A stretch of DNA of 64,000 nucleotides from Pecten maximus (lineage: Eukaryota). The notes under the pieces are model-generated. The model saw only the letters and a list, made by a program, of their open reading frames with translations. It was not told where the DNA came from and did not search any database. Positions 45,801 through 64,000 of the stretch are shown piece by piece (position 1 is the first letter of the stretch; each line of letters opens with the position of its first letter). The stretch is from contig NC_047015.1 of NCBI RefSeq assembly GCF_902652985.1, positions 36,766,001-36,830,000 of the forward strand. Reading direction: 5' to 3'. A program made the position numbers and the translations under genes.

Positions 45801-48800
45801 TGGGAGGTGGTCTTTACCAGAAGGAAATAAAGGGGTTGAGGGAAAGAGGTTCTCTGCCAGAATGAAACACTGGGTAGGGTGGGGGAGGGAGCTTAAGTGC
45901 AGTGGATTAGGGAGTGGGGATCTTTACCAAAGGGAAATATAGGGATAGATGAGATGGTGGTCTTTGGATTTTGTTATTGATATGTTTACATTCAGTATGC
46001 TTGAATAAAAGTAATATCTGTTAGAATTGATTCAAAAGACAAAAATTATTTTTAACGAGAGATTTACTGATATCTAACATTTACTATTTACCTCTGAACA
46101 ACTTGGACAATATCTGTGACAAATGCAATCTGTTCATCAACTTACCTGTTCCATATTACAGAATGGTTTGACCCCCATGCACTTGGCTGCACAAGAAGAC
46201 AAGGTCAACATTGCTGAAGTGCTGGTCAAGTATGGGTCAAACACTGACCCCCAGACAAAGGTGATGCTCACTGTTTAGAAAATACTGTGTTCTTCATATT
46301 TCAAAATAAAAGTTCAAATTCAAGTGTTTTGAGAATTTGAAATACATGTATATATATTATTACTATCAGAAGGATGATGCATAAAACAATTGAAAATGAT
46401 TGATTTTACTTGATAAGCAATATGTGGGAATTGATAAGGTGATGGAAATAAAAAAATTCCTTTGATTGAGAAGTGTATAGTTACTTCTTACCGATGTTTA
46501 TATGACCTTTGACCCTTCAGTTCTTGAGGATATAATATGACTTTTTACTTTTGACCTCGTTTCTTCTAGGCCGGCTATACTCCTTTACACACAGCCTGCC
46601 ATTTTGGACAAATCAACATGGTTCGCTTCCTGTTAGACCAAGGTGCATCAGTGAGCGCAACCACTAAGGTAGGTAACTCTTGACATTCCTTACAATTACT
46701 AGCTTTGTATAGGAATACCCCCAGATGTTACTGAGGTGTAATTAAGAGACATTTTCATTAAAATGAGATTAAGCTAATATTTTTTTTTAGAATTTATTAA
46801 AATGCTGTCAATATGAAACTGTAGGCAGAACCCTGTTACAGTGGAAACAGTTGGTATAGAAACAGCTTTAGGTATTCACTCTGGATATCACTCGACGAGG
46901 CCAACATTCACTTCAGCTCACTTGGTGAGGCGTACAACAAGTGTGATTTGATTGGCTAGCTAGCCAAATTCACTGATGTGAGTGGCTGTTTGAGTTTTCA
47001 TCAAACCTCATTTCACAGATTTCATTGGCTACTCTAGTCAGCTTGTCAATGCAATTTTTGTTGCCAGATTTTGTCAGAAATTCCAACATCCATTATTTAG
47101 TAAAAAAAAAAAAAAGCCCAGTTGAATACATTTGATAAAAAAAATTACCAATGTGATATCATTTCAGCATACATGTATGTGTATAAGTGAAAAATCATGG
47201 AATTCAATCATCAGTCAAAAAACATTTTATAATTTAGTTAAAAATGATTATTTCAATGATTTGATGTAACAACAAACAACTTAAATGACATTTAATGAAT
47301 TCCTGTAATGTGAAGTATTATATTGTCATCTGCTGATCAAGAGGAAGGTTACATCACTGTGGCTATTATGTGACCTACTTTGTTCCCTGTCTATTATGTG
47401 ACCTACTTTGTTCCTGTCTATTATGTGACCTATTTTGTTCCTGTCTATTATGTGACCTACTTTGTTTCTGTCTATTATGTGACCTACTTTGTTTCTGTCT
47501 GTTATGGGACCTACTTTGTTTCTGTCTATTATGTGACCTATTTTGTTCCTGTCTATTATGTGACCTACTTTGTTTCTGTCTATTATGTGACCTACTTTGT
47601 TTCTGTCTATTATGTGACCTACTTTGTTCCTGTCTATTATGTGACCTACTTTGTTTGTCTATTATGTGACCTACTTTGTTTCTGTCTATTATGTGACCTA
47701 TTTTGTTCCTGTCTATTATGTGACCTACTTTGTTCCTGTCTATTATGTGACCTACTTTGTTTCTGTCTATTATGTGATCTACTTTGTTTCTGTCTATTAT
47801 GTGACCTACTTTGTTTCTGTCTATTATGTGACCTACTTTGTTTCTGTCTACTATGTGACCTATTTTGTTCCTGTCTATTATGTGACCTACTTTGTTTCTG
47901 TCTATTATGTGACCTACTTTGTTTCTGTCTATTATGTGACCTATTTTGTTCCTGTCTATTATGTGACCTACTTTGTTCCTGTCTACATTGTGACCCTTTT
48001 TTGTTCCTGTCTGTTATGTGACCTACTTTGTTCCTGTCTATTATGTGACCTACTTTGTTCCTGTCTATTATGTGACCTACTTTGTTCCTGTCTATTATGT
48101 GACCTACTTTGTTCCTGTCTACATTGTGACCCTTTTTTGTTCCTAGCTCGGATACACTCCACTTCACCAGGCAGCCCAACAAGGGCATGTACAGGTCGTA
48201 AACCTTCTCCTGAAAAACAAGGCCTCACCAAACGCTGTTACCAATGTAAGTGATATTCTACTTTCCTATTTCAGCATCAGCTACAGATACTTGTTTGTTT
48301 ACATGTTTACCTGTATAGCTATTTCATTTGATGGGGTGTAACTTTCATGATTATTTCTCTGGGGAAAAAGTACATAATGTACATAATGACAGTTTTATAC
48401 CACACTATTCATCAAACCTTTAAGAGTGTATTAACTGTTGTACAGTAGAGAATTAGTTACCTGTTATCTTATATAGATCAATTTTGTTGAATATGACCTT
48501 AACATTGGCCTGTCCTCAAAATATGTTGTGTTCATTAAATCAGTATCAATCAACTACTGAAATAGCGCTGTGTAATTTACAAGATAATGAAAATGTCGCT
48601 TCTTTGAGAGCAGAAAATGATATTGTTTGATGATCTCCAGTAATTTAGAGTTTTTCCTTGTTTATGTGACTGACATAGGGATTCCTGTTGTTATACCTTT
48701 ATTGGGATTTCTATGTAGCATGTCTGTGGCTATTTTACACATTTCATGTCTACTGGATTTACTGTTTAACCATTTTACACTGTGAACTTACAATGTTGAT

Positions 48801-51800
48801 AGACCATTGATAATACTTAAGATTGCATTACAATAAACAATTAAAATTATTTATCAATGTGTTATTTTTTTTTCTTTTCTGTAGAATCACCAAACGGCTT
48901 TGTCCATTGCCCAACGACTAGGATACCTGTCTGTTGTTGACACACTGAGCACTGTCACTGAGGTGACAGAAACTGTGCCTGCTTCAGAGGACAAGTACAA
49001 GGTCGTGTCCCCGGAAACCATGCAAGATACCTTGTTATCAGACTCAGAAGATGAAGGAGGTATGTAAAAATACATATTTAATTTATATTGGATTGATTTT
49101 ATGGTATTATTTGTAGATAAATCCAACATGTAGATCTATCTGTTTAGAAAACAACCAAGTTTTGTACCGCATGTGTGTTAAGTTGATATGGTGATGTCAT
49201 CAAAACATGTGCACAATAATGATGATATTGTTACAAAATACCTTGGTAGTTATTTGTTGTAAATATGATCCCTAATGAGATAGAAAATACTAAAAAAAAT
49301 AGTTTGCTGCCAAAACAGGTTTTGTACGGATTGACATGGTAATGATGTATTGATGATGTTTATTGTTTGTTTACGTTAATAGTTATTTTTCTATCCGCCA
49401 TTATCAGAAGACAATATACAACAATAGAATGATAGAATGAAGACAATATATGACAATAGAATGATAGAATGAAGACAATATATGACAATAGAATGATAGA
49501 ATGAAGACAATATATGACGATAGAATGATAGAATGAAGACAAAATACAGATGTTTAGATCGTTTTTGTATAACAAAAAAATATTTAGACCACCAATAGAA
49601 AAATTTACTTGTATATTTTCTTCTGGATAGATGTTTATTAAATTATTTTGTTAAAAATTTTTCGTTTGACTTAATTATCTGAAGAATATTGAGAAGAATT
49701 AATAAATGCTATCAATATGAAACTGTAGGCACAACCCGTTACAGTGGAAACAGTTGGTATAGTAACAGCTTTAGGTATTCACGCTGGATATCACTCGACG
49801 AGGCTAACATTCGCTTCAGCTCACTTGGTGAGGCGTTAAATAAGAAGTGCCGTGCCTAGTGTGATGTGATTGGCTAGGTAGCCAACTTCACTGATCTGAG
49901 TGGCTGTTTGAGTTTTCATCACAATTCAATTCACTGATTTCATTGGCTAGTCAGCTTGTCATTGCATTGGTGTCAGAAAAAGGTCAAATTCCATTTTTTT
50001 TTTTTTTTAAATATTCATCAATTAGATCATTCCTTTTGCTATTTATTCTGTTTGAGTCATTTGTTACATTTAATGAGACTCTGGAGTTTGATAATACTTT
50101 TTTTTCAAAAGTCTACTGTGCAAATGTTTTCTATTTCTTGATTTCAACTGATCTTAATGATTTTCACTTAAGAAAATAGTCTTGAAATGATGTGGGTTTT
50201 TTTTTCTATAAGCTAACCATTTCATTCTCAGTTTGATAAGGGTAGCTTACAACCAAATTACAGTAATGATTTTTTCAGTAAAATTGAACTTCATGAATAA
50301 AAATTTACTGAAGACAACTATAACCTAAATATTTTTTTAAAGTCTTTTAAAATTTTTGAAATTTTTATTTAAACTTTTATTCCTAAACATTTACAAAAGA
50401 AATATTTGTGTTTTGGTGGGACATTGTCCGAAAATACCAATCTATGATATAAAGATTACAAAGTCAACTTAGGTAGTGGATAAGACAGTCAAATAGAAAG
50501 TCAGGTTTTGTATGGTGTGAGGATCTAATCTGTGACTGAATTAATTACTAACTTTTGTGAATCCCAGTTTGTTTCACAAATTGGGCTCTGCACTTATAAG
50601 TGTGCCGTGATACAGTGTGTAAGGGGAGACAACTAAGAATAGTTTATGTAAATATATAAGATTTTTTATGCTAATAATACAGATATACTTGGCTCTGATG
50701 GTGAGTTAAGGTTTGTAAATAAAAACTATTATACAATATTGGTGTATCAAACAGAATTTTAGAATACCTGGTAATATTATTACATGGATAATATTTATTA
50801 ATGATTTATTTTAATTGATATTTATCTGGAACTGATATATCTTTGATTTTTATTTCAGTCCTTAAAACCTTAATTTAAACTAACACTTTATATTGTAATT
50901 CATTAATACTTAATAGATTTGTATTTATCAGTGCAATATATCTACATTATATACACTGCATTAAAAACATCAAAATTACATTGATCATTGCCACAGACGT
51001 TTAATGTACACGGAAACTATATATTTATATTATATTTATCATGCAACAACATTATTTGATAATAAAAGAACATTCCCCACATGTTTATTTAATAATAGGT
51101 GTTTTTTTTTTATAAACCTGGTTGTTAATGGTACCATGGTATGCGAGTTATGCAGCACAAATCTTCACTCACTCGGTAGCTGCCTGGGCTGTGTTAGACA
51201 ACATACATAATCCCAATGAAGGCTCTTAATTTGGAGCATGTGGCAAAAGACGGAGTCTACAACACACCATAGTATATATGTTTCTAACGAGAGCACTTCG
51301 TGTGTTCATTGATTATAATGTTAATTACCTGGCCTAACGTATACTTGTATCATATTTGTCTGTTTTTTTCCCCACTAATACCCTCAGTTTGCCTAGGTTT
51401 AAGTCTTGGTCTATGTAAGGGCACTAAATATTGTAAAAGGGGAACAATTTTTATCATAAATGTAATCAATTTTGTTCTCAGATTTTGAACTGGTTAGTTG
51501 TATGCCTAGAGATGCCTTATCAACAGGGCAAACTAATAAGTAAACCAGATAATGTCTTGATGACATGTGTCAAATAATCAGTAAAATCTTGTTCAGGTGG
51601 TTAAGATTTAGTCCAGGTAAAAAATGTTTTCATTGCAGCAACATCATTGTTTAAATGTCTCCTCAATGTTTTCTGGAATGCTAGGCTGCAGGTTAACAGT
51701 TGTATTGTATCTGTGGTTTGACTGTAAAATCAGAGAGAAAATCAAAACCTGATGTTATATCATATTTCAGTCCACATTGAATGTCATATTTCAGATTCAC

Positions 51801-54800
51801 TCAAAGAAATCCCTCGGTATAAAGAACTATACTCTAAAGGTACTCTGGGAATCGGTGTCCCCTAAAAACATGTTGATCGCAACATAGTGCTTTTCTTTCC
51901 ATAATATGTGATACAACATTGGAAAGTATGAACTTCTAGTTAATGCTGATTTTTAAACTGAAATTAGCAGTTAATTTATGATATTGTGTCTTAATTTTCA
52001 TCCAAAATCATATATCTGTAATATATCAACATGATGTGTTGGACAATTTTGTTGTTAGTTCCAAAGCTGGAAAATAAAGCACTATAGATAAATATATGAA
52101 TCCTTTACTATCCTGGGGAGTTAATTGTTTAAGAATCCTGCCTTATAGCTTGGATATCTGGATTATATCTCAGATATCTTGTTTAATATATCTTGGATAT
52201 CTGGGCTTATTGTTTATATAGGCATTATTAAGTGTAGCCTGTCAGCTGGACAAGGGCTGAAGACATTCCTTTTAGCTTATACTCCTCCACCCTGTATAAG
52301 GAATATAGCATCATAATGGCTTCCTCCCTACTTAGATATCCCACTTTCTGTAAAATTTGTTTTACCTTTTTTAACCACTATTTAAAATTTTTATTACCTA
52401 TTTATTTTTGTATATGAAATCATTCCTCAGTTAAATGCTCTCCTGTATTTAAGATAAAATATAACTAATATGCTTGTTTAGCTCTTTGCCTGCTCTTGGT
52501 GGGAAATCCTGCCTGAGCTAGTTGTGTCGGATGTTACTGATTTTTGAGGCGATATTATGCTATTCATCCACTTTAAGAGTTATTATGTGTTGAAGTTTTC
52601 CAGGTTTAATGATTTTACATGGCAAGCAAAGAGTTTAAAACCAAATTTTTGTTTTCTGTTTAAAGTGAAAATTTTTTTAAAAATTTTTGTGAAATTTTGT
52701 TCTTGTTTTTACTAAAGTTCAAGGCTGAATGTTTTCAAAGGATAAGGACAGAGTCAAGGTCAAGTTTGATTGACCTTGGAATAATCGGTACCACACACGC
52801 TGCATATCTAATCCACACTGTCTACTACAAAATGAGACTTTATTTCAATGGATTGGAAAGTTTACTTGGGTTTTTCTTCAGTGAAGAACATATGTTACAA
52901 TTATTTTCATGAATATGCGTTTTGAATTTTTCTTATCGCTGCATACCGGAACAGGAGATGACTTTTTGCCACAATCACCCTTGTTTGGAAAGCCTCTCTC
53001 TGAAACTCACGTCTATCTTCCATACTATGAAGGAAGCAAAATACGTTCTCGTAAGTTTGGCAGCATCAGGTCGTTTACTAAGTGTCCTCGCCAATGGATT
53101 TGCCTGATGATACAACTGTAACACATTTAATCGCATGATCGGTTCCCATTTTGTTTCCGTAACTACCTCGTCTGATTTTCACATTTAGATGGTAATCTTT
53201 TTTTTGTGTCATATCACTTGTGTTTATTTTTTTTTCATTTTTTGTGATCACTTTGGTTTTGATTTTTTGCCACTTTATTTTCATCACCATGGTTTCTGTT
53301 TCAATAGCCACGCTTTACTTACAGATATGACGATGATTAGGTGTATGGCTTGGTAGATTGAGAATGTTGTTGATAAAAAACAGGAATCAAAGAAAATTAG
53401 ATGTCATGATAGATAGTTAAGGTCAAGGCCAAACAGTGAACAGAAAAGAGATGAAGTAAAGCTTGATTAATATTAATATTTGGGATTGTGGTAATAGAAG
53501 AAAAATAGAAAAAACGATAAATAAATGAAATGACTGATATAACCTTGAATCGAAAAATTAAATTCTGTCAATAAACAAAACTTTATCAAAAATAAATTCT
53601 TTCCTATATCTTTTCTTTTTCAATTAAGTTGTTGGAATGTCATATAGATTTATAAAACTCTAGAGATGTCACCATACTGGACATCCAGATGTCAGGTCAG
53701 GGATGTCACCAGATAAGGAGACATCAGATATATTACATAGATACATGGACAGAAATATTCAATATACCAATAACTGATCCAGGTGAGAACTCCACCATCA
53801 GATGACACGTGCCTCCTCACACCTGTTAGTAGATCCTGGACTATCGTCTGTATCTTGTGTCTTGGCAGTTGTTATGCTGTGTTTATTTTCAGTGTTGATG
53901 ACTCACAATGCGTTTTTATTTCCATCATGTTTATTTCATATTCTGTTGATTCTGATGTAGCTGTATGTGTTGATGTGGACTATTTTTAACACCCTATGTT
54001 TGCGGGTAATCGCCGGAATGAGCTAGGCTAGCTTTGAGGCGTTCACGATGTTGTGTTGTAAATCCCTTGTAATCGTTTTCTTTTAGGAAACCACAGTTTC
54101 ATGTCAGGTAAAAACTTGTGCTACCTGTGCTCTATTGACTGGTGTGTGGCCAGTTTGACCACTGTGTGGTTGGTCATTTTGAAAACTGGTCAATACGGTC
54201 TGCCAATTTGCATGTTCCCTTCAATCTAACATAAACCCCACCTTATATTATGCCTAGCACTGACCATTTCAGTCTACAAAATGGCAATCTTTATTCAAAT
54301 ATTTTTGATAAATATATTAACATTAAATCAATTATAGAGGAAAAACTAAATTTTTAGAAAATCTATGAACATTTTTTGGTCCAATTTAGTTCGCACAAAG
54401 CTTCGATCCTAAACCTCAATATAAGCTTATTTTGCTTATTAATCAATTTTGGAATGTTTTTCCCTTTTAGATCTATATAATCGGTATATTTGACAACAGA
54501 ACACCAACATTGGTTTGTTTGAAATAAGTTTTCATTGGCAGAATAAAAATACGCAGAAAATATTGATGAAAAGAGTAAGATGGTGATTTTAGCTAATGAA
54601 ACTGCTGCCAGTATATTTGGCACCAGGGATATTTTTTCAGATGGTCAGTTAAGATAAAAAAGTTTAACCTGCAGAGCATGTACACACATTTATATCTATA
54701 TATCTGCTTAACCCTCCATCATAGAATGAACTAACAGCATGGAGCTACACTGCAGGGGTTAGGACTGTGTTAGAGGTAGAATGAGGCAGTGTAGGGATCG

Positions 54801-57800
54801 GGATACATTAGAGGTAGAATGAGGCAGTAAAGGAAGCGGGCTACATCAGAGGTAGAATGAGGCAGTATAGGGATCGGGATACATCAGAGGTAGAATGAGG
54901 CATTAAAGGAAGCGGGCTACATCAAAGGTAGAATGAGGCAGTATAGGAATCGGGGCTACATCAGAGGTAGAATGAGGCAGTGTAGGGATCGGGACTGCAT
55001 TAGAGGGAGAATGAGGCAGTATAGGGATCGGGGATACATCAGAGGTAGAATGAGGCAGTATAGGGATCGGGATACATCAGAGGTAGAATGAGGCAGTATA
55101 GGGATCGGGGCTACATCAGAGGTAGAATGAGGCAGTATAGGGATCGGGATACATCAGAGGTAGAATGAGGCAGTGTAGGGATCGGGACTGCATTAGAGGG
55201 AGAATGAGGCAGTATAGGGATCGGGGCTACATCAGAGGTAGAATGAGGCAGTATAGGGATCGGGATACATCAGAGGTAGAATGAGGCAGTATAGGGATCG
55301 GGGCTACATCAGAGGTAGAATGAGGCAGTATAGGGATCGGGATACATCAGAGGTAGAATGAGGCAGTAAAGGGGTCAGGGCTGCTTTAGAGGCAGAATGA
55401 AGCGATAAAGGTGTTGAGGCGTCATTAGAGGCAGAATGAGGCAATGTGGAAGTGGGGGCTGTGTTAGGGTAGAATGAGGCAATAGTGGTTGAGATAAGGT
55501 TAGGGTTGTGTAAGGGTTACAGGGACAAGGGTAAGAGTAAAAAGAGGGACTTTGAGGGTAGGTGAGGGGTTAGATGGTGGAGATAAGGGTTTAAGGGTAG
55601 GTGAGGGGTTAGATGTTGGAGATAAGGGTTTGAGGGTAGGTGAGGGGTTAGATGGTGGAGATAAAGATTTGAGGGTAGGTGAGGGTTAGATGGTGGAGAT
55701 AAGGGTTTGAGGGTAGGTGAGGGGTTAGATGGTGATGATAAGGGTTTGAGGGTAGGTGAGGGGTTAGATGGTGATGATAAGGGTTTGAGGGTAAAAGAGG
55801 GCTTAGATGTTGGAGATAGGGATTTGAGGTTAGCTGAGGGGTTAGATGTTGGAGAGAAGGGTTTGAGAGTAGGTGAGGGGCTAGATGGTGGAGATAAGGG
55901 TTTGAGGTTGGGTGAGGGGCTAGATGGTGGAGATAAGGGTTTAAGGGTAGGTGAGGGGCTAGATGGTGGAGATAAGGGTTTAAGGGTAGGTGAGGGGCTA
56001 GATGTTGGAGATAAGGGTTTAAGGGTAGGTGAGGGGCTAGATGGTGGAGATAAGGGTTTAAGGGTAGGTGAGGGGCTAGATGTTGGAGATAAGGGTTTAA
56101 GGGTAGGTGAGGGGCTAGATGGTGGAGATAAGGGTTTAAGGGTAGGTGAGGGGCTAGATGGTGGAGATAAGGGTTTAAGGGTAGGTGAGGGGCTAGATGG
56201 TGGAGATAAGGGTTTAAGGGTAGGTGAGGGGCTAGATGTTGGAGATAAGGGTTTAAGGGTAGGTGAGGGGCTAGATGGTGGAGATAAGGGTTTAAGGGTA
56301 GGTGAGGGGCTAGATGTTGGAGATAAGGGTTTAAGGGTAGGTGAGGGGCTAGATGGTGGAGATAAGGGTTTGAGGGTAGGTGAGGGGTTAGATGGTGATG
56401 ATAAGGGTTTGAGGGTAAAAGAGGGCTTAGATGTTGGAGATAGGGATTTGAGGTTAGCTGAGGGGTTAGATGTTGGAGAGAAGGGTTTGAGAGTAGGTGA
56501 GGGGCTAGATGGTGGAGATAAGGGTTTGAGGGTGGAGGGGCTAGATGGTGGAGATAAGGGTTTAAGGGTAGGTGAGGGGCTAGATGGTGGAGATAAGGGT
56601 TTAAGGGTAGGTGAGGGGCTAGATGTTGGAGATAAGGGTTTAAGGGTAGGTGAGGGGCTAGATGGTGGAGATAAGGGTTTAAGGGTAGGTGAGGGGCTAG
56701 ATGTTGGAGATAAGGGTTTAAGGGTAGGTGAGGGGCTAGATGGTGGAGATAAGGGTTTAAGGGTAGGTGAGGGGCTAGATGGTGGAGATAAGGGTTTAAG
56801 GGTAGGTGAGGGGCTAGATGGTGGAGATAAGGGTTTAAGGGTAGGTGAGGGGCTAGATGTTGGAGATAAGGGTTTAAGGGTAGGTGAGGGGCTAGATGGT
56901 GGAGATAAGGGTTTAAGGGTAGGTGAGGGGCTAGATGTTGGAGATAAGGGTTTAAGGGTAGGTGAGGGGCTAGATGGTGGAGATAAGGGTTTAAGGGTAG
57001 GTGAGGGGCTAGATGTTGGAGATAAGAGTTTAGGGTAGATGAGGGGTTAGATGTTGGAGATAAGGGTTTAAGGGTAGGTGAGGGGTTAGATGTTGGAGAT
57101 AAGGGTTTGAGAGTAGGTGAGGGGCTAGATGTTGGAGATAAGGGTTTAAGGGTAGATGACCAGTTTAAAGTCATGGGGAACATTATCAATTTCAAATTAA
57201 ATTTGTTAATTTTAAGACTAAGTTTGTACCTGAGATCTTATTTTCTACAAATATATGATATCTTTTATTACATTGATTCTTTGTTGTCTACAAAACTAAG
57301 ATACGGGAAGCATTTACAAGAACACCACTTTTGTATGAAACTTGTAAAGATAATTCAAACTGACTTTCATAGACAGAAAGATATTTTTTGTTTATACAGT
57401 AATGAACTTTTTAAACTTGGGTCTTATACAAAGATGTGTATTTACGTTTCTATATATATATATTTATACATTTGCGGCTCCCTTTTTAATCTAGATCGCC
57501 AATGCTGAAACAAATTATCCTTGTAGATTATCACAGATATCAACTTAAAGACGGTAAAGATAAGATAAAAAAACTTCACCTTCTCATCCATCCTAGCTTG
57601 AGCTAGATCCCTGGTGCTGTTATGTGCTACATACTCCTACCAATTCAGCTGCTTCAGAAAGTCTCTGCAAGAAATACTATTATACCATCAAATTCCTTAT
57701 CATTCATGGGTTTTTTTTTGAGAACATTTTAAAAAATGTGTGTCATCATTTCAACTCATTGCATGGAGTTTCCTCCCCTTGTTGGTTATTACTGATCTAC

Positions 57801-60514
57801 TGATCTGATCTGCCAAAAAAAATTTACTGATTAAACTTTTGATATATAATGAAAATGGTGACATTTACCAATGTTTATTTTCAATATTGTATTATTACGT
57901 CTCTTGAAACACATATTTTGTAATCTGTTTCATTTAGGACTATTAAACTCATCAAAAGTTTTACATATGTTACATGGACAGCCGTCAATTGTTGAAATAA
58001 ATCTGAAAGCAAAAAAATGTTTAACAGTCTGCTAAAACCGCCATGTTGTTTTTATTGACCACATTAAGGTCATTGGTTTGTGGACTATATTAAATTTTAT
58101 CTTGATATTTTTGGATTTTGTTTGTTTTCAAACTTCTGAAACTGTAATTTACATAATGATTTTTGCAGTTAGAATTAAAAAAAGTTTTTAATCTGGAGAT
58201 TTTTAGTAACAAGAATGCAAGTATCAAAACAAATAAAAAAAAAACAAAAAACATGACAAAAATAAATTTCATAAATTAAAAAAATTCTTTAAAGAGATTC
58301 TGATGAATGTTTGTAATCAGGCAGTGTGCCAGTGAAAATTTAATGCATCAAGATGTCTTCATTTATATATAAAGTTTTTGCAATAGACACGCACAAAACA
58401 TACTTATCAACATGTAAACAAGCTGAAAGATTTACGTCATAACAAGGGAGGAAGCAGCTCATGAAAGTCAGGAGTTTGTAGGAGAGAAGACTGGTAGGTT
58501 GTTTGGGGGATTCTATAGTGGTAGTAATACAGGTAGTATAGGCCTAAACAATAACTATTACAGATAGCTAGCCCACAGAAGATGACGCTACATCCTGAAA
58601 ATAAATATGGAAAACATGAAATGAGTTGTACAGACCAGTTAGCACTGGACTGTAGGAATCGTCTAATCATAAAACTGCTTGTTGCTACTTGGGCTTCACT
58701 GAACCGCAGGTAGTGAGGTGGTGTGTAGTGGTGAGGGGAGGGACGACAGCTCCACTTAAGATATATTTACCTGAATACTTTACCAGAAGTGCAACATAAT
58801 TTTTTTCGATATTTTTACAATTAAGTAAATGTATATGCCTAAAATAGGGCTTGTGTACTCTCGGCTGTATATATGTACACATGTGGAGAACCTGTGAACG
58901 ATTCCATGGAGGGATTTAATGCATTCTGTGGGATGTGCAAACTTAAAAGTTAAATAAAACCTGGGAAGTTTTCTAGGAATTTACTATTCCATCATGATTT
59001 GTTGGTCCTGTACAGGAAAGAGTAAATTAGCCCATGAACAACAAAAAGGTAATGGTATATTCTATCTATCTCTAAAGCACATTGATAATTAATGTTACTT
59101 TTAAAATGATACATTAACAGGGGGAAATCAGGGTCTAATATTGATATTAGTCTTTTTCTTGATGTTTGGGAAGGTTTTTTTTGTTTTGTTTTGAAATTTT
59201 GATAATTTTTCTTTTTGGTAGAGGTATACTTTTGAAAAGTGCCTTGAATTATTAATTGCATAAAACATGGGGCTGAGACACGAGGACCTCAGCCTGAAGT
59301 ATAGCCAGTTCATGTTGTATAGATGGATCATTGTATTGATATATAGCAACTCTAGTACACTAGTATACTGTACATCTCAGTATTTTGTGAATACTTATTT
59401 TCCAGAGTTATATTCTTTAAAGAGCTTTATGAAAAAAAGTCGAAATAATTTTGCTTCAATTTTTCTTTTTTTGGACTAAGTTTTGAAAAGTTCTGTTTTA
59501 CAAAACACTTTGGATTTTAATTCGAGAAATGAACAATAATATTCATAAGATGTGAAATATGCATGATAGAAATATTCTGGAGAGTTTCACAAAAATTTAT
59601 ATCTCACAAAAATATATATGATTTACAGTATTCCTCATGTCCTCTGTTGAGATATATAGTTCATATTCATTGTAAGTTCACTTTTTCATTTCAGGTATTG
59701 TATAATGTATATTATATTTTTACATTTGACTGACAATAATCATTCTTCATTAATTTAAGGGAAATCATATTTAAAAGTCTTTTATACAAATAATATTGGA
59801 TTTTTGTTACACGATCAAAGGAATTTGTTTTCTTCAACATGTAAATCTGCTTTTATCTTCATAAGGAAGGAATTAATTGTTAATGATATTTGATTTAAGT
59901 TGTTTCATGCACTAATCTAAGGAGTTCAATCTCACATTAATAGACAATTCAAGGTATTCTATATTAACCTTGCTTGAAGGTCAAGGTCATATATATATAT
60001 ATGTATATATAACTAAGATCATTCAGAAAGATGTTGCAATGATGAACCTATGATTGATCACGATAAGCAAAATGTAGAGTGTAGAATGATCACTGATGAT
60101 AGTTAGAGGTATATTATTATATTTTACAGATATAGATAAACAATACTCTAAAGTTGAAATTTTATTGAATGTATATATTAGGTGGAGCATTTTAGAATGA
60201 CAAATGTTCAGTTTTTAAAAGTTTTTTTTTTTTTCCTACAGGTGAAGATAGCATCTCCCTGGAGCGAGGAGAAAGCACTTCACCATTGGACACTTCTTAT
60301 GAAAAGGTAAGTCACTCGATGTATAGCCTGTCTATGTTGCAGCAAGACTGGCCATTATGTTTTTAGGGGATCCATCGTTATTTATAGATTGTGGTTATCT
60401 CCCCTTTCATCAGTGTGGGAGAGAGTCATCTGTCATACTAATGTAGCTCAGCTGTCTCCATTGTCTTTGACCTAGGACAAGAGAAAAGCCATATTTGCTA
60501 CTCCTGAATCTGAG
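18778..60514 (+). CDS. ank2: Canonical ankyrin (ANK1/2/3 pro-ortholog, unc-44/Ank2-like), multi-exon and partial: 24-ANK-repeat membrane-binding domain plus start of linker; continues beyond window
   Basis: 20 exons with AG/GT boundaries splice in frame into 24 ANK repeats with ankyrin-specific peptides ([71 protein letters not shown]). Confidence 0.97.
19416..20839. repeat. 40-bp minisatellite CATTGACAGTGTGGCCTGTCATTCCCCAGAATAGTTATAC, ~35 copies
   Basis: direct reading; internal inverted repeat TGACAG..CTGTCA. Confidence 0.97.
23542..23640 (+). CDS. ank2: ankyrin exon, ANK2: [33 protein letters not shown]
   Basis: ttacag|...|gtaata, 99 nt. Confidence 0.97.
24090..24188 (+). CDS. ank2: ankyrin exon, ANK3: [33 protein letters not shown]
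   Basis: atacag|...|gtataa, 99 nt. Confidence 0.97.
24855..24953 (+). CDS. ank2: ankyrin exon, ANK4: [33 protein letters not shown]
   Basis: ccacag|...|gtaagt, 99 nt. Confidence 0.97.
24993..25190. repeat. 50-bp tandem repeat, 4 copies
   Basis: TTTGACAGTGATGTCAAGCTGTCATACTCATTTGGTCCATTAAACCGTGA. Confidence 0.95.
25471..25659 (+). CDS. ank2: ankyrin exon, ANK5-6: [63 protein letters not shown]
   Basis: tttcag|...|gtaaaa, 189 nt; includes the ankyrin-diagnostic short repeat 5. Confidence 0.97.
26183..26212 (+). CDS. ank2: candidate 30-nt microexon [10 protein letters not shown] between ANK6 and ANK7
   Basis: catgctaaacag|AGCGGCAGTTTGGTTAACGACACCACCAAG|gtttgt; phase 0-0; same position as, and similar to, vertebrate ANK2 insert MMVNRTTE. 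Confidence 0.8.
27610..29175. repeat. 41-bp minisatellite GGGCCTGTCAGGGACTTACTGGTTTATCTTACACATGGATG (core 27867-28700) with degenerate ~36-bp flanks
   Basis: direct reading. Confidence 0.93.
28716..28880. mobile_element. MITE-like element with Tc1/pogo-type ends, inserted in the 41-bp satellite flank
   Basis: imperfect TIRs GTCAAATCTGCTA ... TAGACAGATTTTACTGTA; related remnant AACCTGTCTA..AGACAGGTTTGACTGTA at 2188-2228. Confidence 0.55.
30800..30898 (+). CDS. ank2: ankyrin exon, ANK7: [33 protein letters not shown]
   Basis: tttcag|...|gtcagt, 99 nt. Confidence 0.97.
31016..36014. repeat. ~5-kb composite satellite of intermixed 22-bp (ACAGTACACATGTAATGTCATA) and 42-bp (adds ARGGTATAATACCCACCAGT-type module) units
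   Basis: direct reading; fills ~97% of the ANK7-ANK8 intron. Confidence 0.97.
36038..36136 (+). CDS. ank2: ankyrin exon, ANK8: [33 protein letters not shown]
   Basis: tttcag|...|gtgagt, 99 nt. Confidence 0.97.
36312..36410 (+). CDS. ank2: ankyrin exon, ANK9: [33 protein letters not shown]
   Basis: ccccag|...|gtcagt, 99 nt. Confidence 0.97.
36658..36756 (+). CDS. ank2: ankyrin exon, ANK10: [33 protein letters not shown]
   Basis: ccatag|...|gttagt, 99 nt. Confidence 0.97.
37196..37294 (+). CDS. ank2: ankyrin exon, ANK11: [33 protein letters not shown]
   Basis: tatcag|...|gtgagt, 99 nt. Confidence 0.97.
37538..37636 (+). CDS. ank2: ankyrin exon, ANK12: [33 protein letters not shown]
   Basis: ttacag|...|gtaaat, 99 nt. 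Confidence 0.97.
37658..39017. repeat. 32-bp minisatellite GTGAGGGATTCCCTAGATTGTACAGGTCCTGT, ~42 copies
   Basis: direct reading; palindrome AGGGATTCCCT. Confidence 0.96.
39268..39465 (+). CDS. ank2: ankyrin exon, ANK13-14: [18 protein letters not shown]...[11 protein letters not shown]
   Basis: ttccag|...|gtaggt, 198 nt. Confidence 0.97.
40576..40613 (+). ncRNA. degenerate minimal hammerhead ribozyme motif (retrozyme/Penelope-type remnant)
   Basis: tgtc-CTGAAGA-aaCCCaagaGGGc-GAAA-CCAG-TC-aaca. Confidence 0.4.
40901..42018. repeat. 24-bp minisatellite ATGTTTGTTGTCCTACTCAGTAAA, ~46 copies
   Basis: direct reading. Confidence 0.97.
42571..42810. repeat. 47-bp tandem repeat, 5 copies
   Basis: GGAGACAGAACAGAGAGGGGTKGGGGTTCCCTTACCCTATAACCCTA. 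Confidence 0.93.
43710..43907 (+). CDS. ank2: ankyrin exon, ANK15-16: [14 protein letters not shown]...GATHSLTTK
   Basis: ttacag|...|gtaggt, 198 nt. Confidence 0.97.
44175..44372 (+). CDS. ank2: ankyrin exon, ANK17-18: [14 protein letters not shown]...KASPHSSAK
   Basis: ttacag|...|gtaagg, 198 nt. Confidence 0.97.
44808..44906 (+). CDS. ank2: ankyrin exon, ANK19: [33 protein letters not shown]
   Basis: ttatag|...|gtagac, 99 nt. Confidence 0.97.
45396..45494 (+). CDS. ank2: ankyrin exon, ANK20: [33 protein letters not shown]
   Basis: tttcag|...|gtaagt, 99 nt. Confidence 0.97.
45580..45860. repeat. G-rich 39-bp tandem repeat
   Basis: TTTACCAGAAGGAAATAAAGGGGTTGATGGGAGGGGGTC-like units. Confidence 0.88.
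46162..46260 (+). CDS. ank2: ankyrin exon, ANK21: [33 protein letters not shown]
   Basis: ttacag|...|gtgatg, 99 nt. Confidence 0.97.
46570..46668 (+). CDS. ank2: ankyrin exon, ANK22: [33 protein letters not shown]
   Basis: ttctag|...|gtaggt, 99 nt. Confidence 0.97.
46799..47070 (+). repeat. dispersed ~270-bp element, copy 1
   Basis: closely similar to 49704-49978 (CAATATGAAACTGTAGGCA...GGATATCACTCGACGAGGC...CAGCTCACTTGGTGAGGCG). Confidence 0.85.
47363..48146. repeat. 27-bp minisatellite TGTGACCTACTTTGTTCCTGTCTATTA, ~29 copies, ending at the exon acceptor
   Basis: direct reading. Confidence 0.96.
48147..48245 (+). CDS. ank2: ankyrin exon, ANK23: [33 protein letters not shown]
   Basis: tcctag|...|gtaagt, 99 nt. 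Confidence 0.97.
48885..49059 (+). CDS. ank2: ankyrin exon, ANK24 plus linker start: [21 protein letters not shown]...[22 protein letters not shown]
   Basis: ctgtag|...GGAG|gtatgt, 175 nt, ends in phase 1. Confidence 0.96.
49407..49541. repeat. 32-bp tandem repeat GAAGACAATATATGACAATAGAATGATAGAAT, ~4 copies
   Basis: direct reading. Confidence 0.9.
49704..49978 (+). repeat. dispersed ~270-bp element, copy 2 (direct orientation)
   Basis: matches 46799-47070. Confidence 0.85.
50683..50700 (+). CDS. ank2: candidate 18-nt linker microexon (D)ILGSD
   Basis: atgctaataatacag|ATATACTTGGCTCTGATG|gtgagt; phase 1-1; UGC and CTAAT branch-like motif upstream; strong donor. Confidence 0.65.
51795..51839 (+). 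CDS. ank2: candidate 45-nt linker exon (D)[14 protein letters not shown]
   Basis: atttcag|...AAG|gtactc; open in phase 1-1; weak donor. Confidence 0.35.
52955..53050 (+). CDS. ank2: candidate 96-nt linker exon (G)[31 protein letters not shown]
   Basis: gaacag|GAGATGAC...TCTC|gtaagt; phase 1-1; resembles ANK2 GDDSLP...YLRYSLEG. Confidence 0.65.
54087..54107 (+). CDS. ank2: candidate 21-nt linker microexon (G/R)NHSFMS
   Basis: ttttcttttag|GAAACCACAGTTTCATGTCAG|gtaaaa; phase 1-1; TGCATG at 54209 downstream. Confidence 0.6.
54770..55482. repeat. 38/39-bp minisatellite AGAGGTAGAATGAGGCAGTATAGGGATCGGGATACATC
   Basis: direct reading. Confidence 0.95.
55551..57157. repeat. G-rich 39-bp minisatellite GGGTAGGTGAGGGGCTAGATGGTGGAGATAAGGGTTTAA, ~41 copies
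   Basis: direct reading; source of the 443-aa and 515-aa pseudo-ORFs. Confidence 0.97.
57527..57553 (+). CDS. ank2: candidate 27-nt linker microexon (D)YHRYQLKD
   Basis: tccttgtag|ATTATCACAGATATCAACTTAAAGACG|gtaaag; phase 1-1; joined to the next exon gives [14 protein letters not shown], similar to ANK2 EYLRPEDLKELGDDSL. Confidence 0.55.
60242..60306 (+). CDS. ank2: linker exon (G)[21 protein letters not shown]
   Basis: long poly-T + cctacag|...AAG|gtaagt; phase 1 to 0; strong splice sites. Confidence 0.85.
60476..60514 (+). CDS. ank2: 39-nt linker exon [13 protein letters not shown]
   Basis: gacctag|...GAG|gtaaga; phase 0-0, in frame with the previous exon. Confidence 0.7.
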
Positions 60515-61301
60515 GTAAGAGGTAGTTATCTCCCTTCCCATTACCTCTTCCCCAGAAATGCTGCAGCATATTCAGTGTTAATCTTTGTTTGAAAGCTGAA
60601 ACTGTCCATGTCCTGTTTTGTTTATGTGTGTGTGTGCAATTGAGCAAGCGAGTTATCATTTTTCAGCATCATGAACTGTGCTCTTCATCCTTTATGAGAA
60701 AGCATACAGTTCTTTTTAGGTAACTCATCCAATGTATTATCGACTTATGTAATCCATCTCTCATTTCCTGAAATGGTGACCCCCTTTTTCCTGATCCTTT
60801 TGATACGCTGGTACCTCAGATAAGTCTGCCACAAACAGAACCCCATGGGCAAACCTTGTCGACCCTTTAGAGGGATCAGTTATGTTAGAGCAGATGTCAT
60901 GCAACTTATCTTATTTTTCATTTTCCTTTAAAGCTTAAAAGTGCACCCTTCATATTGTGATTGCATGGATGTAGATAATTCCCTATGGAGGTAGGAAGGC
61001 GTCGTTGATGTCTCAATTGTAAAAGTGTTGTATATCCAATAGTTTCTAACAGACCAAGTAGAGTAGAATTCGACAAAAAATAACTTATTGAGTATAAATT
61101 AATATATATAATTAATATATAATAGAGCTACATTCTGAATCAGTAGACCTAATTTTTAAAAGGAATATGAATTCTACAGGTAAGATTTAAAGCAATTATC
61201 AGTTATAGGCAATTGAAATAAATTTTTTCTCTCTATATTTCAAAACTTCAAACCCGTTTCAAAATAGAATTTTCTGTAGACATAAGGTGTGTTCCCAGTA
61301 T

Positions 61302-61486
61302 TATAAAAGGCACTGTAATTTTCAGGGTTAACATATCCACCATGTATGTCCTGTTGTCATGGTAACACATCAGCCTTGACTGTTTTTATACGTTGCCATG
61401 GTAATAAGAATACAAACCGTGACATCTTGGCTGGTTGTCATGGTTATATAGGTATGACGGCCACGTTTGTGTTGACCACCGTAAGC
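61302..61486 (+). promoter_or_regulatory. TATA box, three RFX X-box-like motifs and a donor: candidate internal promoter/first exon (MTATFVLTT)
   Basis: TATAAAAG 61302; GTTGTCATGGTAAC 61353, GTTGCCATGGTAAT 61392, GTTGTCATGGTTAT 61434; ATG 61454..ACC|gtaagc. Confidence 0.35.
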
Positions 61487-62199
61487 TCATGTTGTGGGTG
61501 TTGTATACATGGAGTGGCAAGTGTTTTCCTTCCGAAAGTATTTGTATGATATTTGCTTGAAGTGCTGAAAGTGTTACAAGACTTTTATTGTTTGTATGAA
61601 ATTTGTTTTTGAAAAAAAAACCTGCTTTGTATTGTTATTTGCTTTTCAACATAGGCTTAACACAAAGGCATTTGGAATGTTACAAAACTTATTCTCACCA
61701 GGCTGAAAAAACCCATTATGAATCTTGAGAAAAAGATGATAGACACATTATAATAAGGAAATATACCAGATCAAAGGAATAAAGGAAAGTATGAGAAAGC
61801 ATTTTTTCTTGCAATGTGAGGCTGTATCAGTGTATGAATAAGAGCCAATTTCTGTTGAGAGAGAAAAGATACAATTCAGATATCACTATGCTTCTTCAAA
61901 GTAGCGTAGCATTTCTATAGGAATTTGCTGAAACTGATTCGTTAATAAACCAAAGAATGGCACTTAATTATACAGACATGCCTCGCACAGGCAGAAATAG
62001 TAATATGGTTTACTATCTCTAGGCTTCATAATTAGGTGTTTGTGTACTGTGTTCAAAAAGAGAGTATCTCACAGCCTACGCATAATTGTAAGTTAAAGAG
62101 AAGTAGCTACCTCGTAAACAACTTTGTTATAGTTTAGGTATGTAATAGTTCACCACTGAAAGACATGGCCGACATTACTCCTCTCTCCAGCATAAAATA

Positions 62200-62450
62200 T
62201 TCCTTAAAAGCAACTTCTCCATGGTTATAAAATGGTCTATAGTTTGGATATATCGACAGTAGAATACCGAGATGAAACAGCTATACAGTTTGTTCAAATA
62301 AATTACATTGACCTACTTTCGGGTCACAGGTGTCAAATCTGATTAAATCTTTAACCCTGCTTCTTCTGAATAACAAGAGGCCTATAGTGGCCTGATGTTG
62401 GTCCAGTAGAATGCTGGAATGATTACCAAGTTTGTTCAAATGAATGACTG
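62200..62450. mobile_element. second degenerate copy of the same repeat family
   Basis: GTTTGTTCAAAT..TGACCTACTTT..GTCACAGG and AACAAGAGGCC motifs shared with 10230-10830. Confidence 0.4.
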
Positions 62451-62459
62451 CTATTTCCA

Positions 62460-62675
62460 TATGTTATCAATAAGTGACTTATTCTCCTGTTCATGTGTTA
62501 TCAATAAGTGAGCTACGATCCTGTTCATGTGTTATCAATAAGTGACCTATTCTCCTGTTCATGTGTTATCAATAAGTGAGCTACGATCCTGTTCGCATGT
62601 TATCAATAAGTGACCTATTCTCCTGTTCGTGTGCTATCAATAAGTGAGCTACGATCCTGTTCATGTGTTATCAAT
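62460..62675. repeat. 34-bp tandem repeat with alternating A/B variants (68-bp dimer)
   Basis: TGTTATCAATAAGTGA(CCTATTCT|GCTACGAT)CCTGTTCATG. Confidence 0.92.
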
Positions 62676-64000
62676 CTATCATCTTTCCTCAGGTTATGTT
62701 TATGAATTGTAACATTTTAAATGCCTTTGTATTCAGAAGAGATTGTATGGCAGTAACTCTTCATTGTTTAGAAATGTTATTTTCATGAAATTGCTAACAA
62801 ATGTTTAGAATGTCATTATGATATATATTATATATTACATTTAATATTTGTTGTTTTTTTATTCTTTTTCGTAAATAATTTATCTTTAACGTTATATATA
62901 TTCTGTTGACAAATATAATTGTCACAAAGTATGTATTATATGCACACTGACTTTCCAACCAAAGGCCGTTTTATTTTCTTAATCACATTTTAATGTAAGT
63001 AGCTCAGCTAATTGATAGATATATTTAGGTTTGGTTTTATTTGTCTATTGGTTTTTTATTGTTTTTTTTTATTATTATTTTATTTTTTATTTTTTTCATT
63101 GTGTTGCTGCACTGTTGTGTTGACAACTCTGTTGCAAAAAATAATTCATTGTCTTGTTGAATTGTCTTTGTCGTATTTTGCCGGTGTCGTCTGCAGTTTT
63201 GTTGCACGGGACGGAGAATGTGTGCATGTGTAACTGTATTACTCTAGTGAAAAATCACATACTCGGAAAATTAACCCCAGTAAATTACATATCTCTATTG
63301 TAAAACTTGCATCATCCAAACATCACTTATGCCATTTTTTTTAATAGTCAGGATTTCAGATTATAAAAGAAATAAATTAATATCAAATATACCACAAAAT
63401 TAAGATTTCAGTTTACTCAAATTTATGTTGAAAGCTAAGAGAACATGTGAATGCTATACCAAGCGATGTATATAAGATCCAGTTTACACAAGTAAATTCT
63501 GTAAGTTTCTTGATAAGTCAAGGTTCAGGGTATGGGGTAAACTAGGAAATATATATGTTTTGCACTAGATGTTTATGTCACTTAGGCTTCAGTTATAGGC
63601 TAATAATCAAAGTATGATCTAAGCAAGGAAAGCAGAAAGTATGTTTTGCACAAGATTTTGGGTTACTGAGGGTTTGTTTTGGACAAATAACGAGCGGGTG
63701 TTTATATTAGAGTAAAACGCGAAATAAAGATATGTCTGGATTATTGAGGGTTTGGTTTATGCAGGTCAAACTGTGATGATTAAATGCAATATTGGAAAAT
63801 AAAATGTGGACAGAATAATTAACAGAAGAGGAATGGGGAGAATATTTAAATGAAAAAAAGTATCATCAGAAAAACTTATATTGTTGATGAAATTAGACAA
63901 TCCTTTCCGAAGTAGTGATTTTTCCTAGCCAGTGCCCTTTTTGATTTCTGATTTTCTGTGTCAATGTGTTTGGTTGATCCTCTTGTTATGCTCGTCTTTG

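What the first reader, a model, noticed from the sequence alone, without database searches (positions are those of the whole stretch)
49060..60514. Cluster of frame-preserving phase-1 micro/mini-exons fragmenting the ankyrin ANK-ZU5 linker
Seen: between the phase-1 donor at 49059 and the phase-1 acceptor at 60242 are at least five AG..GT segments, all open in phase 1-1 and all multiples of 3: 18 nt (50683), 45 (51795), 96 (52955), 21 (54087) and 27 (57527). Three have UGC just upstream (50669, 52940, 57503) and two have RBFOX TGCATG downstream (54209, 57760). Joined, [20 protein letters not shown] aligns with ANK2 DDTMTGD..EYLRPEDLKELGDDSL. Known: this linker folds back on the ANK repeats and autoinhibits target binding in ankyrin-B/G. 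Inference: a combinatorial cassette (up to 32 isoforms) that tunes autoinhibition by tissue.
Basis: partly seen in the sequence, partly recalled or inferred. Interest (0 to 1): 0.8.

Follow-up and report, generated by a model that had tools for sequence, protein, structure and literature searches.

The report
Alternative mini-exons in scallop ankyrin linker
In the king scallop's giant ankyrin gene, the long intron after the last ankyrin-repeat exon holds at least two real optional exons (96 and 21 bases); the other three proposed ones are unproven, and other bivalves have similar optional exons annotated at this site.

Summary
The window is part of the Pecten maximus giant ankyrin ("ankyrin-2-like") gene. 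But the bare pattern (AG..GT, open, multiple of 3) is not above chance: 1,100 such segments lie in this intron.

Independent evidence splits the five segments.
- 96 nt (52955-53050): a real exon. It is conserved across molluscs and arthropods and used with exactly these borders in two scallop orthologue models. RefSeq lists isoforms with and without it in octopus, oysters and clams.
- 21 nt (54087-54107): a real microexon. One spliced RNA contig joins 49059>54087 and 54107>60242.
- 18, 45 and 27 nt: no RNA support. Splice-site scores and peptide similarities do not exceed chance.

In three other runs the main contig joins 49059 directly to 60242. So a cassette cluster exists, but only two members are shown, and "five exons, 32 isoforms" is not.

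The insertion point lies directly after the homologue of the vertebrate AI-c fold-back segment. That makes an effect on ANK-groove autoinhibition plausible, but it is inferred only. Optional exons at this junction are already known in vertebrate ANK2/ANK3 and annotated in many bivalves, so this is a new member of a known kind.

The parts
48885..49059 (+). Constitutive exon: end of the last ANK repeat plus the homologue of the vertebrate AI-c fold-back segment. Phase-1 donor (GAG|gtatgt).
   Evidence: 98% identical to the scallop orthologues P0169 and P0170. Aligns to PDB 5y4f_A, Ankyrin-2 repeats 13-24 plus linker, at E 3e-11. Covered by spliced contigs in X1, X4 and X5.
50683..50700 (+). Candidate 18-nt cassette (D-ILGSD-G). 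Unverified.
   Evidence: Good splice sites, rank 4 of 1,100 at 13.0 bits, but about 0.6 such sites are expected by chance. No contig covers it. Single copy in the genome. Ruditapes has an 18-nt cassette and Mya and Crassostrea virginica 24-nt cassettes at the same position, without significant similarity.
51795..51839 (+). Candidate 45-nt cassette ([16 protein letters not shown]). Unverified.
   Evidence: Weak sites, rank 73. Covered only by unspliced low-depth pieces, X1 51605-51862 and X2 51677-51863. Similarity to the Mya mini-exon peptide GSLKSGVSYRRYFSK scores 26, against 29-33 for the null. Single copy.
52955..53050 (+). Real 96-nt cassette exon ([33 protein letters not shown]), conserved across molluscs and arthropods.
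   Evidence: tblastn E 5e-16 to scallop orthologues that use exactly these borders. The motif [13 protein letters not shown] is found in molluscs and arthropods. Isoforms with and without it are annotated in Octopus, Ostrea, Saccostrea, Crassostrea and Mya. The main contigs of X1, X4 and X5 skip it. Only one copy in the genome.
54087..54107 (+). Real 21-nt microexon (G-NHSFMS-G).
   Evidence: An X2 contig shows the joint 49059>54087 (GT..AG), then runs from 54107 into the first letters of exon 60242. Best splice-site score of all 1,100 candidates.
54209..54214 (+). TGCATG 102 nt downstream of the 21-nt microexon; possible RBFOX site.
   Evidence: The motif is not enriched in the intron as a whole, so this is a lead only.
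54772..57159 (+). Two G-rich minisatellites inside the intron: 54772-55443 (unit 38/77 nt) and 55551-57159 (39 nt, 41 copies, with GGTAGGTGAGG donor-like motifs).
   Evidence: GC skew is 0.5-0.6. They inflate the count of chance AG..GT segments.
57527..57553 (+). Candidate 27-nt cassette ([10 protein letters not shown]). Unverified.
   Evidence: Weak acceptor, rank 43. Outside the stretch where reads were laid; the X2 contig skips it. Resembles mini-exons just before the G-E-D-S exon in Saccostrea echinata, Potamilus and Dreissena, but the scores equal the null. Single copy.
60242..60306 (+). Constitutive exon ([22 protein letters not shown]), phase 1 in and phase 0 out.
   Evidence: 100% identical to P0170. 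It is the target of the loose ends of all spliced contigs.

Best explanation
This 11.2-kb intron lies in the Pecten maximus giant ankyrin gene. It follows the exon that ends the 24th ANK repeat and encodes the AI-c-like fold-back segment.

**Shown**
- The default splice joins 49059 directly to 60242.
- Two optional phase-1 exons can be inserted. One is an ancient 96-nt exon (52955-53050, motif [13 protein letters not shown]). The other is a 21-nt microexon (54087-54107).

**Not shown**
- The 18-, 45- and 27-nt segments are candidates that no evidence separates from the many chance AG..GT frames in the intron.

**Inferred**
- Each inserted exon adds 7 or 32 residues to the disordered linker.
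- By analogy with vertebrate ankyrin-B/G, this would change how the linker occupies the ANK-repeat groove, and so how easily membrane partners bind.
- GCATG lies 83 and 102 nt downstream of the two real exons. This hints at control by RBFOX-type factors.
For: **Species.** The assembly size of 918,306,378 b in 3,983 scaffolds equals the published P. maximus assembly (PMC7191990).

**Splicing.**
- X1, X4 and X5 contigs (depth 83, 45 and 17) cover 48885-49059 and continue with the first letters of exon 60242.
- The X2 contig joins 49059>54087 (GT..AG) and 54107>60242.

**96-nt exon.**
- Exact borders are used by the Mizuhopecten and Ylistrum proteins.
- It is conserved in molluscs and arthropods.
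- It is annotated as present or absent in different isoforms in Octopus, Ostrea, Saccostrea, Crassostrea and Mya.

**Cassette clusters in relatives.** Ostrea edulis shows 6 linker variants and Mya arenaria 5. All start with a residue whose codon begins with G.

**Link to autoinhibition.**
- AI-c homology: PDB 5y4f_A, E 3e-11.
- Vertebrate linker autoinhibition and alternative exons 5' of the linker exon are described in PMC3663501 and PMC5779224.
Against: - Inclusion of the 96-nt exon was not seen in any of the four runs laid. Only unspliced low-depth pieces cross its acceptor and donor. Its use in this species therefore rests on conservation and on orthologue gene models.
- The 21-nt inclusion rests on one contig of depth 2.1 in one run.
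- Contigs drop rare variants, so the three unverified segments are not excluded.
- No binding or structural test of the autoinhibition idea was possible.
- The similarity of G-E-D-S-I-S-L to the vertebrate AI-b start is weak.
Confidence: 0.75

Rival explanations
1. One reading: all five segments are real, independently used cassettes, giving up to 32 isoforms. They would probably be neural or muscle specific, and so missing from the runs examined.
For: - Two of the five are real.
- The 18-nt segment has strong splice sites.
- Other bivalves have cassettes of 18-27 nt at the same positions. Examples are Ruditapes D-VDNWL-G, and Saccostrea echinata and Potamilus peptides ending ..LK. just before G-E-D-S.
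- All three unverified segments are single copy, so they are not transposon debris.
- TGC lies upstream of the 18- and 27-nt segments, and TGCATG lies downstream of the 27-nt segment.
Against: - No spliced contig uses them.
- The 45-nt segment is crossed only by unspliced pieces.
- The 27- and 45-nt splice-site scores rank 43rd and 73rd among chance segments.
- Peptide similarities equal the nulls from the minus strand and from reversed queries.
Confidence: 0.12
2. Only the 96-nt exon has a function. The 21-nt inclusion is splicing noise at a strong decoy exon, and the other three segments are chance frames.
For: - The 21-nt form is a single contig at depth 2.1 in one run.
- No homologue of its peptide was found at significance in other bivalves.
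- Strong decoy sites occur at about 0.6 per intron by chance.
Against: - It has the best splice-site pair of all 1,100 candidates and keeps the frame.
- TGCATG lies 102 nt downstream of it.
- In X2 it is the only junction form reported for this exon.
- Mytilus and gastropod isoforms carry mini-exons with a loosely similar N-S-S-F-V-G-S type peptide.
Confidence: 0.13

Closest known systems
Alternative small exons 5' of the linker exon in vertebrate ANK2 and ANK3 (Cunha et al. 2008 and Peters et al. 1995, as cited in He, Tseng and Bennett 2013, PMC3663501)
   Same: [quoted passage not shown]
- Proposed to shift the linker relative to the ANK repeats.
   Different: - In the scallop the main optional exon is a 96-nt exon shared by molluscs and arthropods, with no detectable vertebrate counterpart. 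It gave no ankyrin hit in the PDB sequence search.
- Orthology between the vertebrate and scallop mini-exons is not shown.
Ankyrin-B/G linker autoinhibitory segments AI-c and AI-b (Chen et al. 2017, PMC5779224; PDB 5y4f, 5y4e)
   Same: - The exon before the cassette site aligns with AI-c at E 3e-11.
- The arthropod linker aligns weakly with the start of the AI-b chain..LGDDSLP...
- The cassettes therefore sit between the two segments.
   Different: - In vertebrates AI-b and AI-c are reported to be retained in all known isoforms.
- Here the inserted peptides are extra sequence between them.
- Binding of any scallop segment to the ANK groove is untested.
RefSeq isoform sets of bivalve ankyrin-2-like genes (Ostrea edulis, Mya arenaria, Mytilus trossulus, Crassostrea virginica, Ruditapes philippinarum, Saccostrea, Dreissena)
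   Same: - Same junction after ..SDSEDEG, with several phase-1 mini-exons.
- The 96-nt exon is used in different combinations, including a skip-all form.
   Different: - The mini-exon peptides differ between lineages and are not demonstrably homologous to the scallop candidates.
Neuronal microexon programme (Srrm234/eMIC; for example the Ank3 E35a 27-nt microexon, PMC12713133; PMC8797185)
   Same: - Very short frame-preserving exons in disordered regions of a neuronal scaffold protein.
- UGC lies upstream of two candidates.
   Different: - E35a lies between the UPA and death domains, not in the ANK-ZU5 linker.
- The confirmed 21-nt exon has no UGC upstream.
- Tissue specificity and dependence on the eMIC domain are untested.

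Membership tests
Canonical giant ankyrin (24 ANK repeats, ZU5-ZU5-UPA, death domain) | A run of ANK-repeat exons orthologous to ankyrin-2/3-type proteins | tested here: met
   Scallop orthologues P0169 and P0170 carry Pfam ANK, ZU5 (PF00791), UPA (PF17809) and death (PF00531) domains. They align exon by exon to 18775-49061 at about 92% identity.
Canonical giant ankyrin (24 ANK repeats, ZU5-ZU5-UPA, death domain) | ZU5/UPA/death module downstream | not tested
   It lies beyond the end of the window. No ZU5 exon was found in 60300-64000.
Cassette (skipped or included) exon | Transcripts with the exon spliced in at AG/GT borders | tested here: met
   - 21 nt: the X2 contig joins 49059>54087 and 54107>60242.
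- 96 nt: these borders are used in orthologue proteins, but it was not seen spliced in the four runs.
- 18, 45 and 27 nt: not seen.
Cassette (skipped or included) exon | Transcripts that skip the exon | tested here: met
   X1, X4 and X5 contigs run from 49059 straight into exon 60242.
Cassette (skipped or included) exon | Reading frame kept in both forms | tested here: met
   All segments are multiples of 3 and open in phase 1-1.
Cassette (skipped or included) exon | Conservation of the exon above the flanking intron | tested here: inconclusive
   - 96 nt: strongly conserved at protein level.
- The four short segments could not be tested.
Srrm234/eMIC-type neuronal microexon | Length of about 3-27 nt with a UGC motif close upstream of the 3' splice site | tested here: inconclusive
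   - The 18-, 21- and 27-nt segments meet the length criterion.
- UGC lies upstream of the 18- and 27-nt segments but not of the confirmed 21-nt exon.
- The background rate is 13-22%.
Srrm234/eMIC-type neuronal microexon | Neuron-specific inclusion that depends on the eMIC domain | not testable with these tools
   The runs are coded and their tissues unknown. There is no perturbation data.
RBFOX-enhanced exon | (U)GCAUG within about 300 nt downstream | tested here: inconclusive
   - GCATG lies 83 nt after the 96-nt exon.
- TGCATG lies 102 nt after the 21-nt exon and 207 nt after the 27-nt segment.
- The intron as a whole shows no enrichment.
Ankyrin linker autoinhibitory segments (AI-c, AI-b) | Sequence homology to AI-c directly after ANK repeat 24 | tested here: met
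   Exon 48885-49059 against PDB 5y4f_A residues 364-420, E 3e-11.
Ankyrin linker autoinhibitory segments (AI-c, AI-b) | Sequence homology of the cassette peptides, or of exon 60242, to AI-b | tested here: not met
   - The 96-nt exon peptide gave no ankyrin hit in the PDB sequence search.
- The 27-nt peptide scores at null level against the arthropod counterpart of the AI-b start.
- Only the arthropod linker hits the AI-b chain, weakly, at E 0.21.
Ankyrin linker autoinhibitory segments (AI-c, AI-b) | Binding of the segment to the ANK-repeat groove | not testable with these tools
This needs ITC, pull-down or a structure.

The most novel reading that the evidence does not exclude
The 96-nt exon shared by molluscs and arthropods ([13 protein letters not shown]) would be the functional counterpart of vertebrate AI-b: an aromatic-rich peptide that plugs the middle of the ANK groove. 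In molluscs it would be switched on and off by splicing. The surrounding lineage-specific microexons, including some or all of the scallop 18-, 21-, 27- and 45-nt segments, would fine-tune spacing in a tissue-specific way. Autoinhibition of ankyrin, fixed in all vertebrate isoforms, would then be a regulated splicing choice in protostomes.
Probability: 0.15. Interest if true: 0.6.

Novelty: new member of a known kind. Interest (0 to 1): 0.3.

Why it matters
Ankyrins tie ion channels and adhesion molecules to the membrane skeleton, and the linker after the ANK repeats controls whether the binding groove is open.

If splicing inserts or removes peptides exactly between the two linker autoinhibitory segments, invertebrates could set ankyrin activity tissue by tissue. 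In vertebrates both segments are reported as constant.

The practical gains are modest:
- Two exons are placed correctly on the king scallop gene.
- A conserved 32-residue motif, found in molluscs and arthropods, is flagged for binding tests.
- Short in-frame AG..GT segments cannot be called exons from sequence alone.

Tried and rejected
**Searches that gave nothing**
1. Isoforms of the window's own species: three word-index protein searches found no Pecten maximus ankyrin. They used the P0004 region, the P0012 region and the 58-aa exon. They found only other species and short genomic fragments that read into the intron.
DNA-level conservation of the short segments could therefore not be tested.
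3. A paralogue search in the scallop's own genome with the 96-nt exon peptide found only the gene itself, so no internal comparison was possible.

**Tests that did not discriminate**
4. I aligned mini-exon peptides from 30 mollusc linker variants, by Smith-Waterman, to all frames of the intron. Their scores (22-27) equal the minus-strand and reversed-query nulls (18-37), so they cannot count as evidence of homology.
5. The same test with the arthropod Y-R-Y-L-T..M-K-S-L stretch against the 27-nt segment gave score 17, rank 12-70 among the 574 plus-strand frames. One beetle query was the exception (score 25, third best frame).
6. Splice-site scoring does not discriminate: the proven 96-nt exon ranks only 76th.
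7. The PDB sequence search with the 96-nt exon peptide gave no ankyrin hit.

**Checked and excluded**
8. A repeat origin for the three unverified segments is excluded: each is single copy.

**Left out**
Structure prediction of ANK repeats plus linker isoforms was therefore not done.

Full report
**Identity of the locus**

The window is G000:C1:36766001-36830000 of an assembly of 918,306,378 bases in 3,983 scaffolds. These are exactly the figures published for the king scallop Pecten maximus (PMC7191990).

Exons of a canonical giant ankyrin run from about 18.8 kb to 49.06 kb. They are about 92% identical overall, and 98% in the last ANK exon, to the "Ankyrin-2" proteins of Mizuhopecten yessoensis (P0169) and Ylistrum balloti (P0170). 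Both proteins carry ANK, ZU5, UPA and death-domain Pfam hits.

**Check of the observation**

- The donor at 49059 is in phase 1.
- The acceptor at 60242 is in phase 1.
- There are five AG..GT segments of 18, 45, 96, 21 and 27 nt, all open in phase 1-1.

The TGC and TGCATG positions are also right.

The pattern itself carries no weight.
- The intron has 1,100 such segments of 15-120 nt. Shuffles give about 536, and part of the excess comes from two G-rich minisatellites at 54772-57159.
- I trained a splice-site matrix on 18 sure exons of this window. The 21-nt segment ranks first and the 18-nt segment fourth. The 27-, 45- and 96-nt segments rank 43rd, 73rd and 76th.
- The 96-nt segment turns out to be a real exon, so a low rank refutes nothing.
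- A score as good as the 18-nt segment's is expected about 0.6 times per intron of this size, so a high rank proves nothing either.

**RNA evidence**

One run search and one read-laying run were allowed. Logan contigs of four runs from four studies were laid on 48700-54600.
- In X1, X4 and X5 the well-covered contig (depth 83, 45 and 17) covers exon 48885-49059. It then continues with the first letters of exon 60242. The direct 49059>60242 splice is therefore the main form there.
- In X2 one contig (depth 2.1) shows a GT..AG joint from 49059 to 54087. After 54107 it continues for 113 letters that begin with exon 60242.
- The 21-nt microexon is therefore spliced in, and that transcript skips the 27-nt segment.
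- The 45-nt segment, and the acceptor and donor of the 96-nt exon, are crossed only by low-depth unspliced pieces.
- The 18-nt segment is not covered.

Contigs show presence, not absence. Rare isoforms could be missed.

**Evidence from relatives**

A full HMMER search with the 58-residue exon and two word-index searches returned orthologues from molluscs and arthropods.

The 96-nt exon:
- The peptide [33 protein letters not shown] is identical in Ylistrum and Mizuhopecten, with exactly these borders.
- The motif [13 protein letters not shown] recurs in gastropods, cephalopods, other bivalves, chelicerates, crustaceans and insects.
- The exon is optional in annotated isoform sets of Octopus bimaculoides, Ostrea edulis, Saccostrea cucullata, Crassostrea virginica and Mya arenaria.

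The wider cluster:
- RefSeq models show clusters of further mini-exons at the same junction. Ostrea edulis has six linker variants built from three cassettes, Mya arenaria has five, and Mytilus trossulus and Ruditapes have three each.
- Every variant begins with G, D, V, A or E. This fits a split G|NN codon, that is phase 1.

The specific 18-, 45- and 27-nt candidates cannot be tied to any of those mini-exons.
- Some resemblances are tempting. Examples are Saccostrea echinata ..YKKLK, Potamilus ..KRFKQLKY and Dreissena ..SYHRH.. before the G-E/D-D exon, and Mya GSLKSGVSYRRYFSK against the 45-nt peptide.
- They score no better than matches to the minus strand or to reversed queries.
- All three candidates are single copy in the genome.

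**Position relative to known functional segments**

The constitutive exon before the cassette site aligns to PDB 5y4f_A at E 3e-11. That entry is ankyrin-B repeats 13-24 with the fold-back AI-c segment.

Chen et al. 2017 map AI-c to residues 828-852 and AI-b to 865-896 of ankyrin-B. They report that both are retained in all known vertebrate isoforms.

The horseshoe-crab linker aligns weakly with the start of the AI-b chain 5y4e_A, around ..LGDDSLP... The cassettes therefore sit directly after AI-c and before the region that corresponds, loosely, to the start of AI-b.

He et al. 2013 already note alternative exons just 5' of the linker exon in ANK2 and ANK3. They suggest these could shift the linker relative to the ANK repeats.

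An effect on autoinhibition in the scallop is a fair inference, but it is not tested. The 96-nt peptide has no detectable sequence relative among solved ankyrin structures.

**Regulatory motifs**
- TGCATG is not enriched in the intron (3, against 16 in the whole window).
- Both confirmed exons do have GCATG within about 100 nt downstream, at 53133 and 54210. This is a post hoc lead for RBFOX-type control.
- UGC close upstream occurs at three of the five segments, against a 13-22% background. It is absent from the confirmed microexon.

**Verdict**
- Two of the five segments are real optional exons.
- The direct splice is the main form in three of the four runs.
- The remaining three segments are unproven, and as sequence patterns they cannot be told from chance.
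- The claim of 32 combinatorial isoforms is not supported.
- The feature is a new member of a known kind. Cassette exons at the ANK-linker junction are known in vertebrates and annotated by pipeline in many bivalves.

**Limits**

Noticed in passing
window 55551-57159 and 54772-55443: Two G-rich minisatellites lie inside the same intron: 39 nt in 41 copies, and 38/77 nt in about 8-16 copies. The 39-nt unit carries GGTAGGTGAGG, a donor-like motif repeated about 41 times between the 21-nt microexon and the 27-nt candidate. This recalls earlier notes on splice-site-like minisatellites elsewhere in this gene.
   Followed up: partly
window 60476-60514: A 39-nt AG..GT segment is open in phase 0-0 ([13 protein letters not shown]), just after exon 60242-60306. 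It loosely resembles the octopus peptide D-L-R-K-V-R-A-T-S-Q-E at the same position. The next orthologous exon (D-I-L-R-H-P..) is not in the window. No RNA or homology evidence was obtained.
   Followed up: partly
window 50643-50684: A local 22-nt near-duplication (TTTATG.AAATA.TA.AGATTT, 1.9 copies) forms the acceptor region of the 18-nt candidate.
   Followed up: no
window 52347-52380, 52645-52677 and 50290-50356: Short intronic stretches match internal parts of long, well-covered contigs that otherwise lie elsewhere (X4 and X5, depths up to 209). They are probably fragments of expressed repeats, not part of this gene's transcripts.
   Followed up: no
window 51862/51863: Unspliced low-depth contigs from two different studies (X1 and X2) both end at this position, 23-24 nt after the donor of the 45-nt candidate. 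The cause is unknown; it may be a polymorphism or a coverage edge.
   Followed up: no
orthologue proteins: Gastropod ankyrins (Babylonia, Nucella, Biomphalaria, Pomacea, Arion) carry a further optional peptide of about 22 residues (G-S-F/S-Y/F-V-G-S-Y/F-R-S..) before the 96-nt exon, and extra peptides after it. No counterpart was detectable in the scallop intron.
   Followed up: partly
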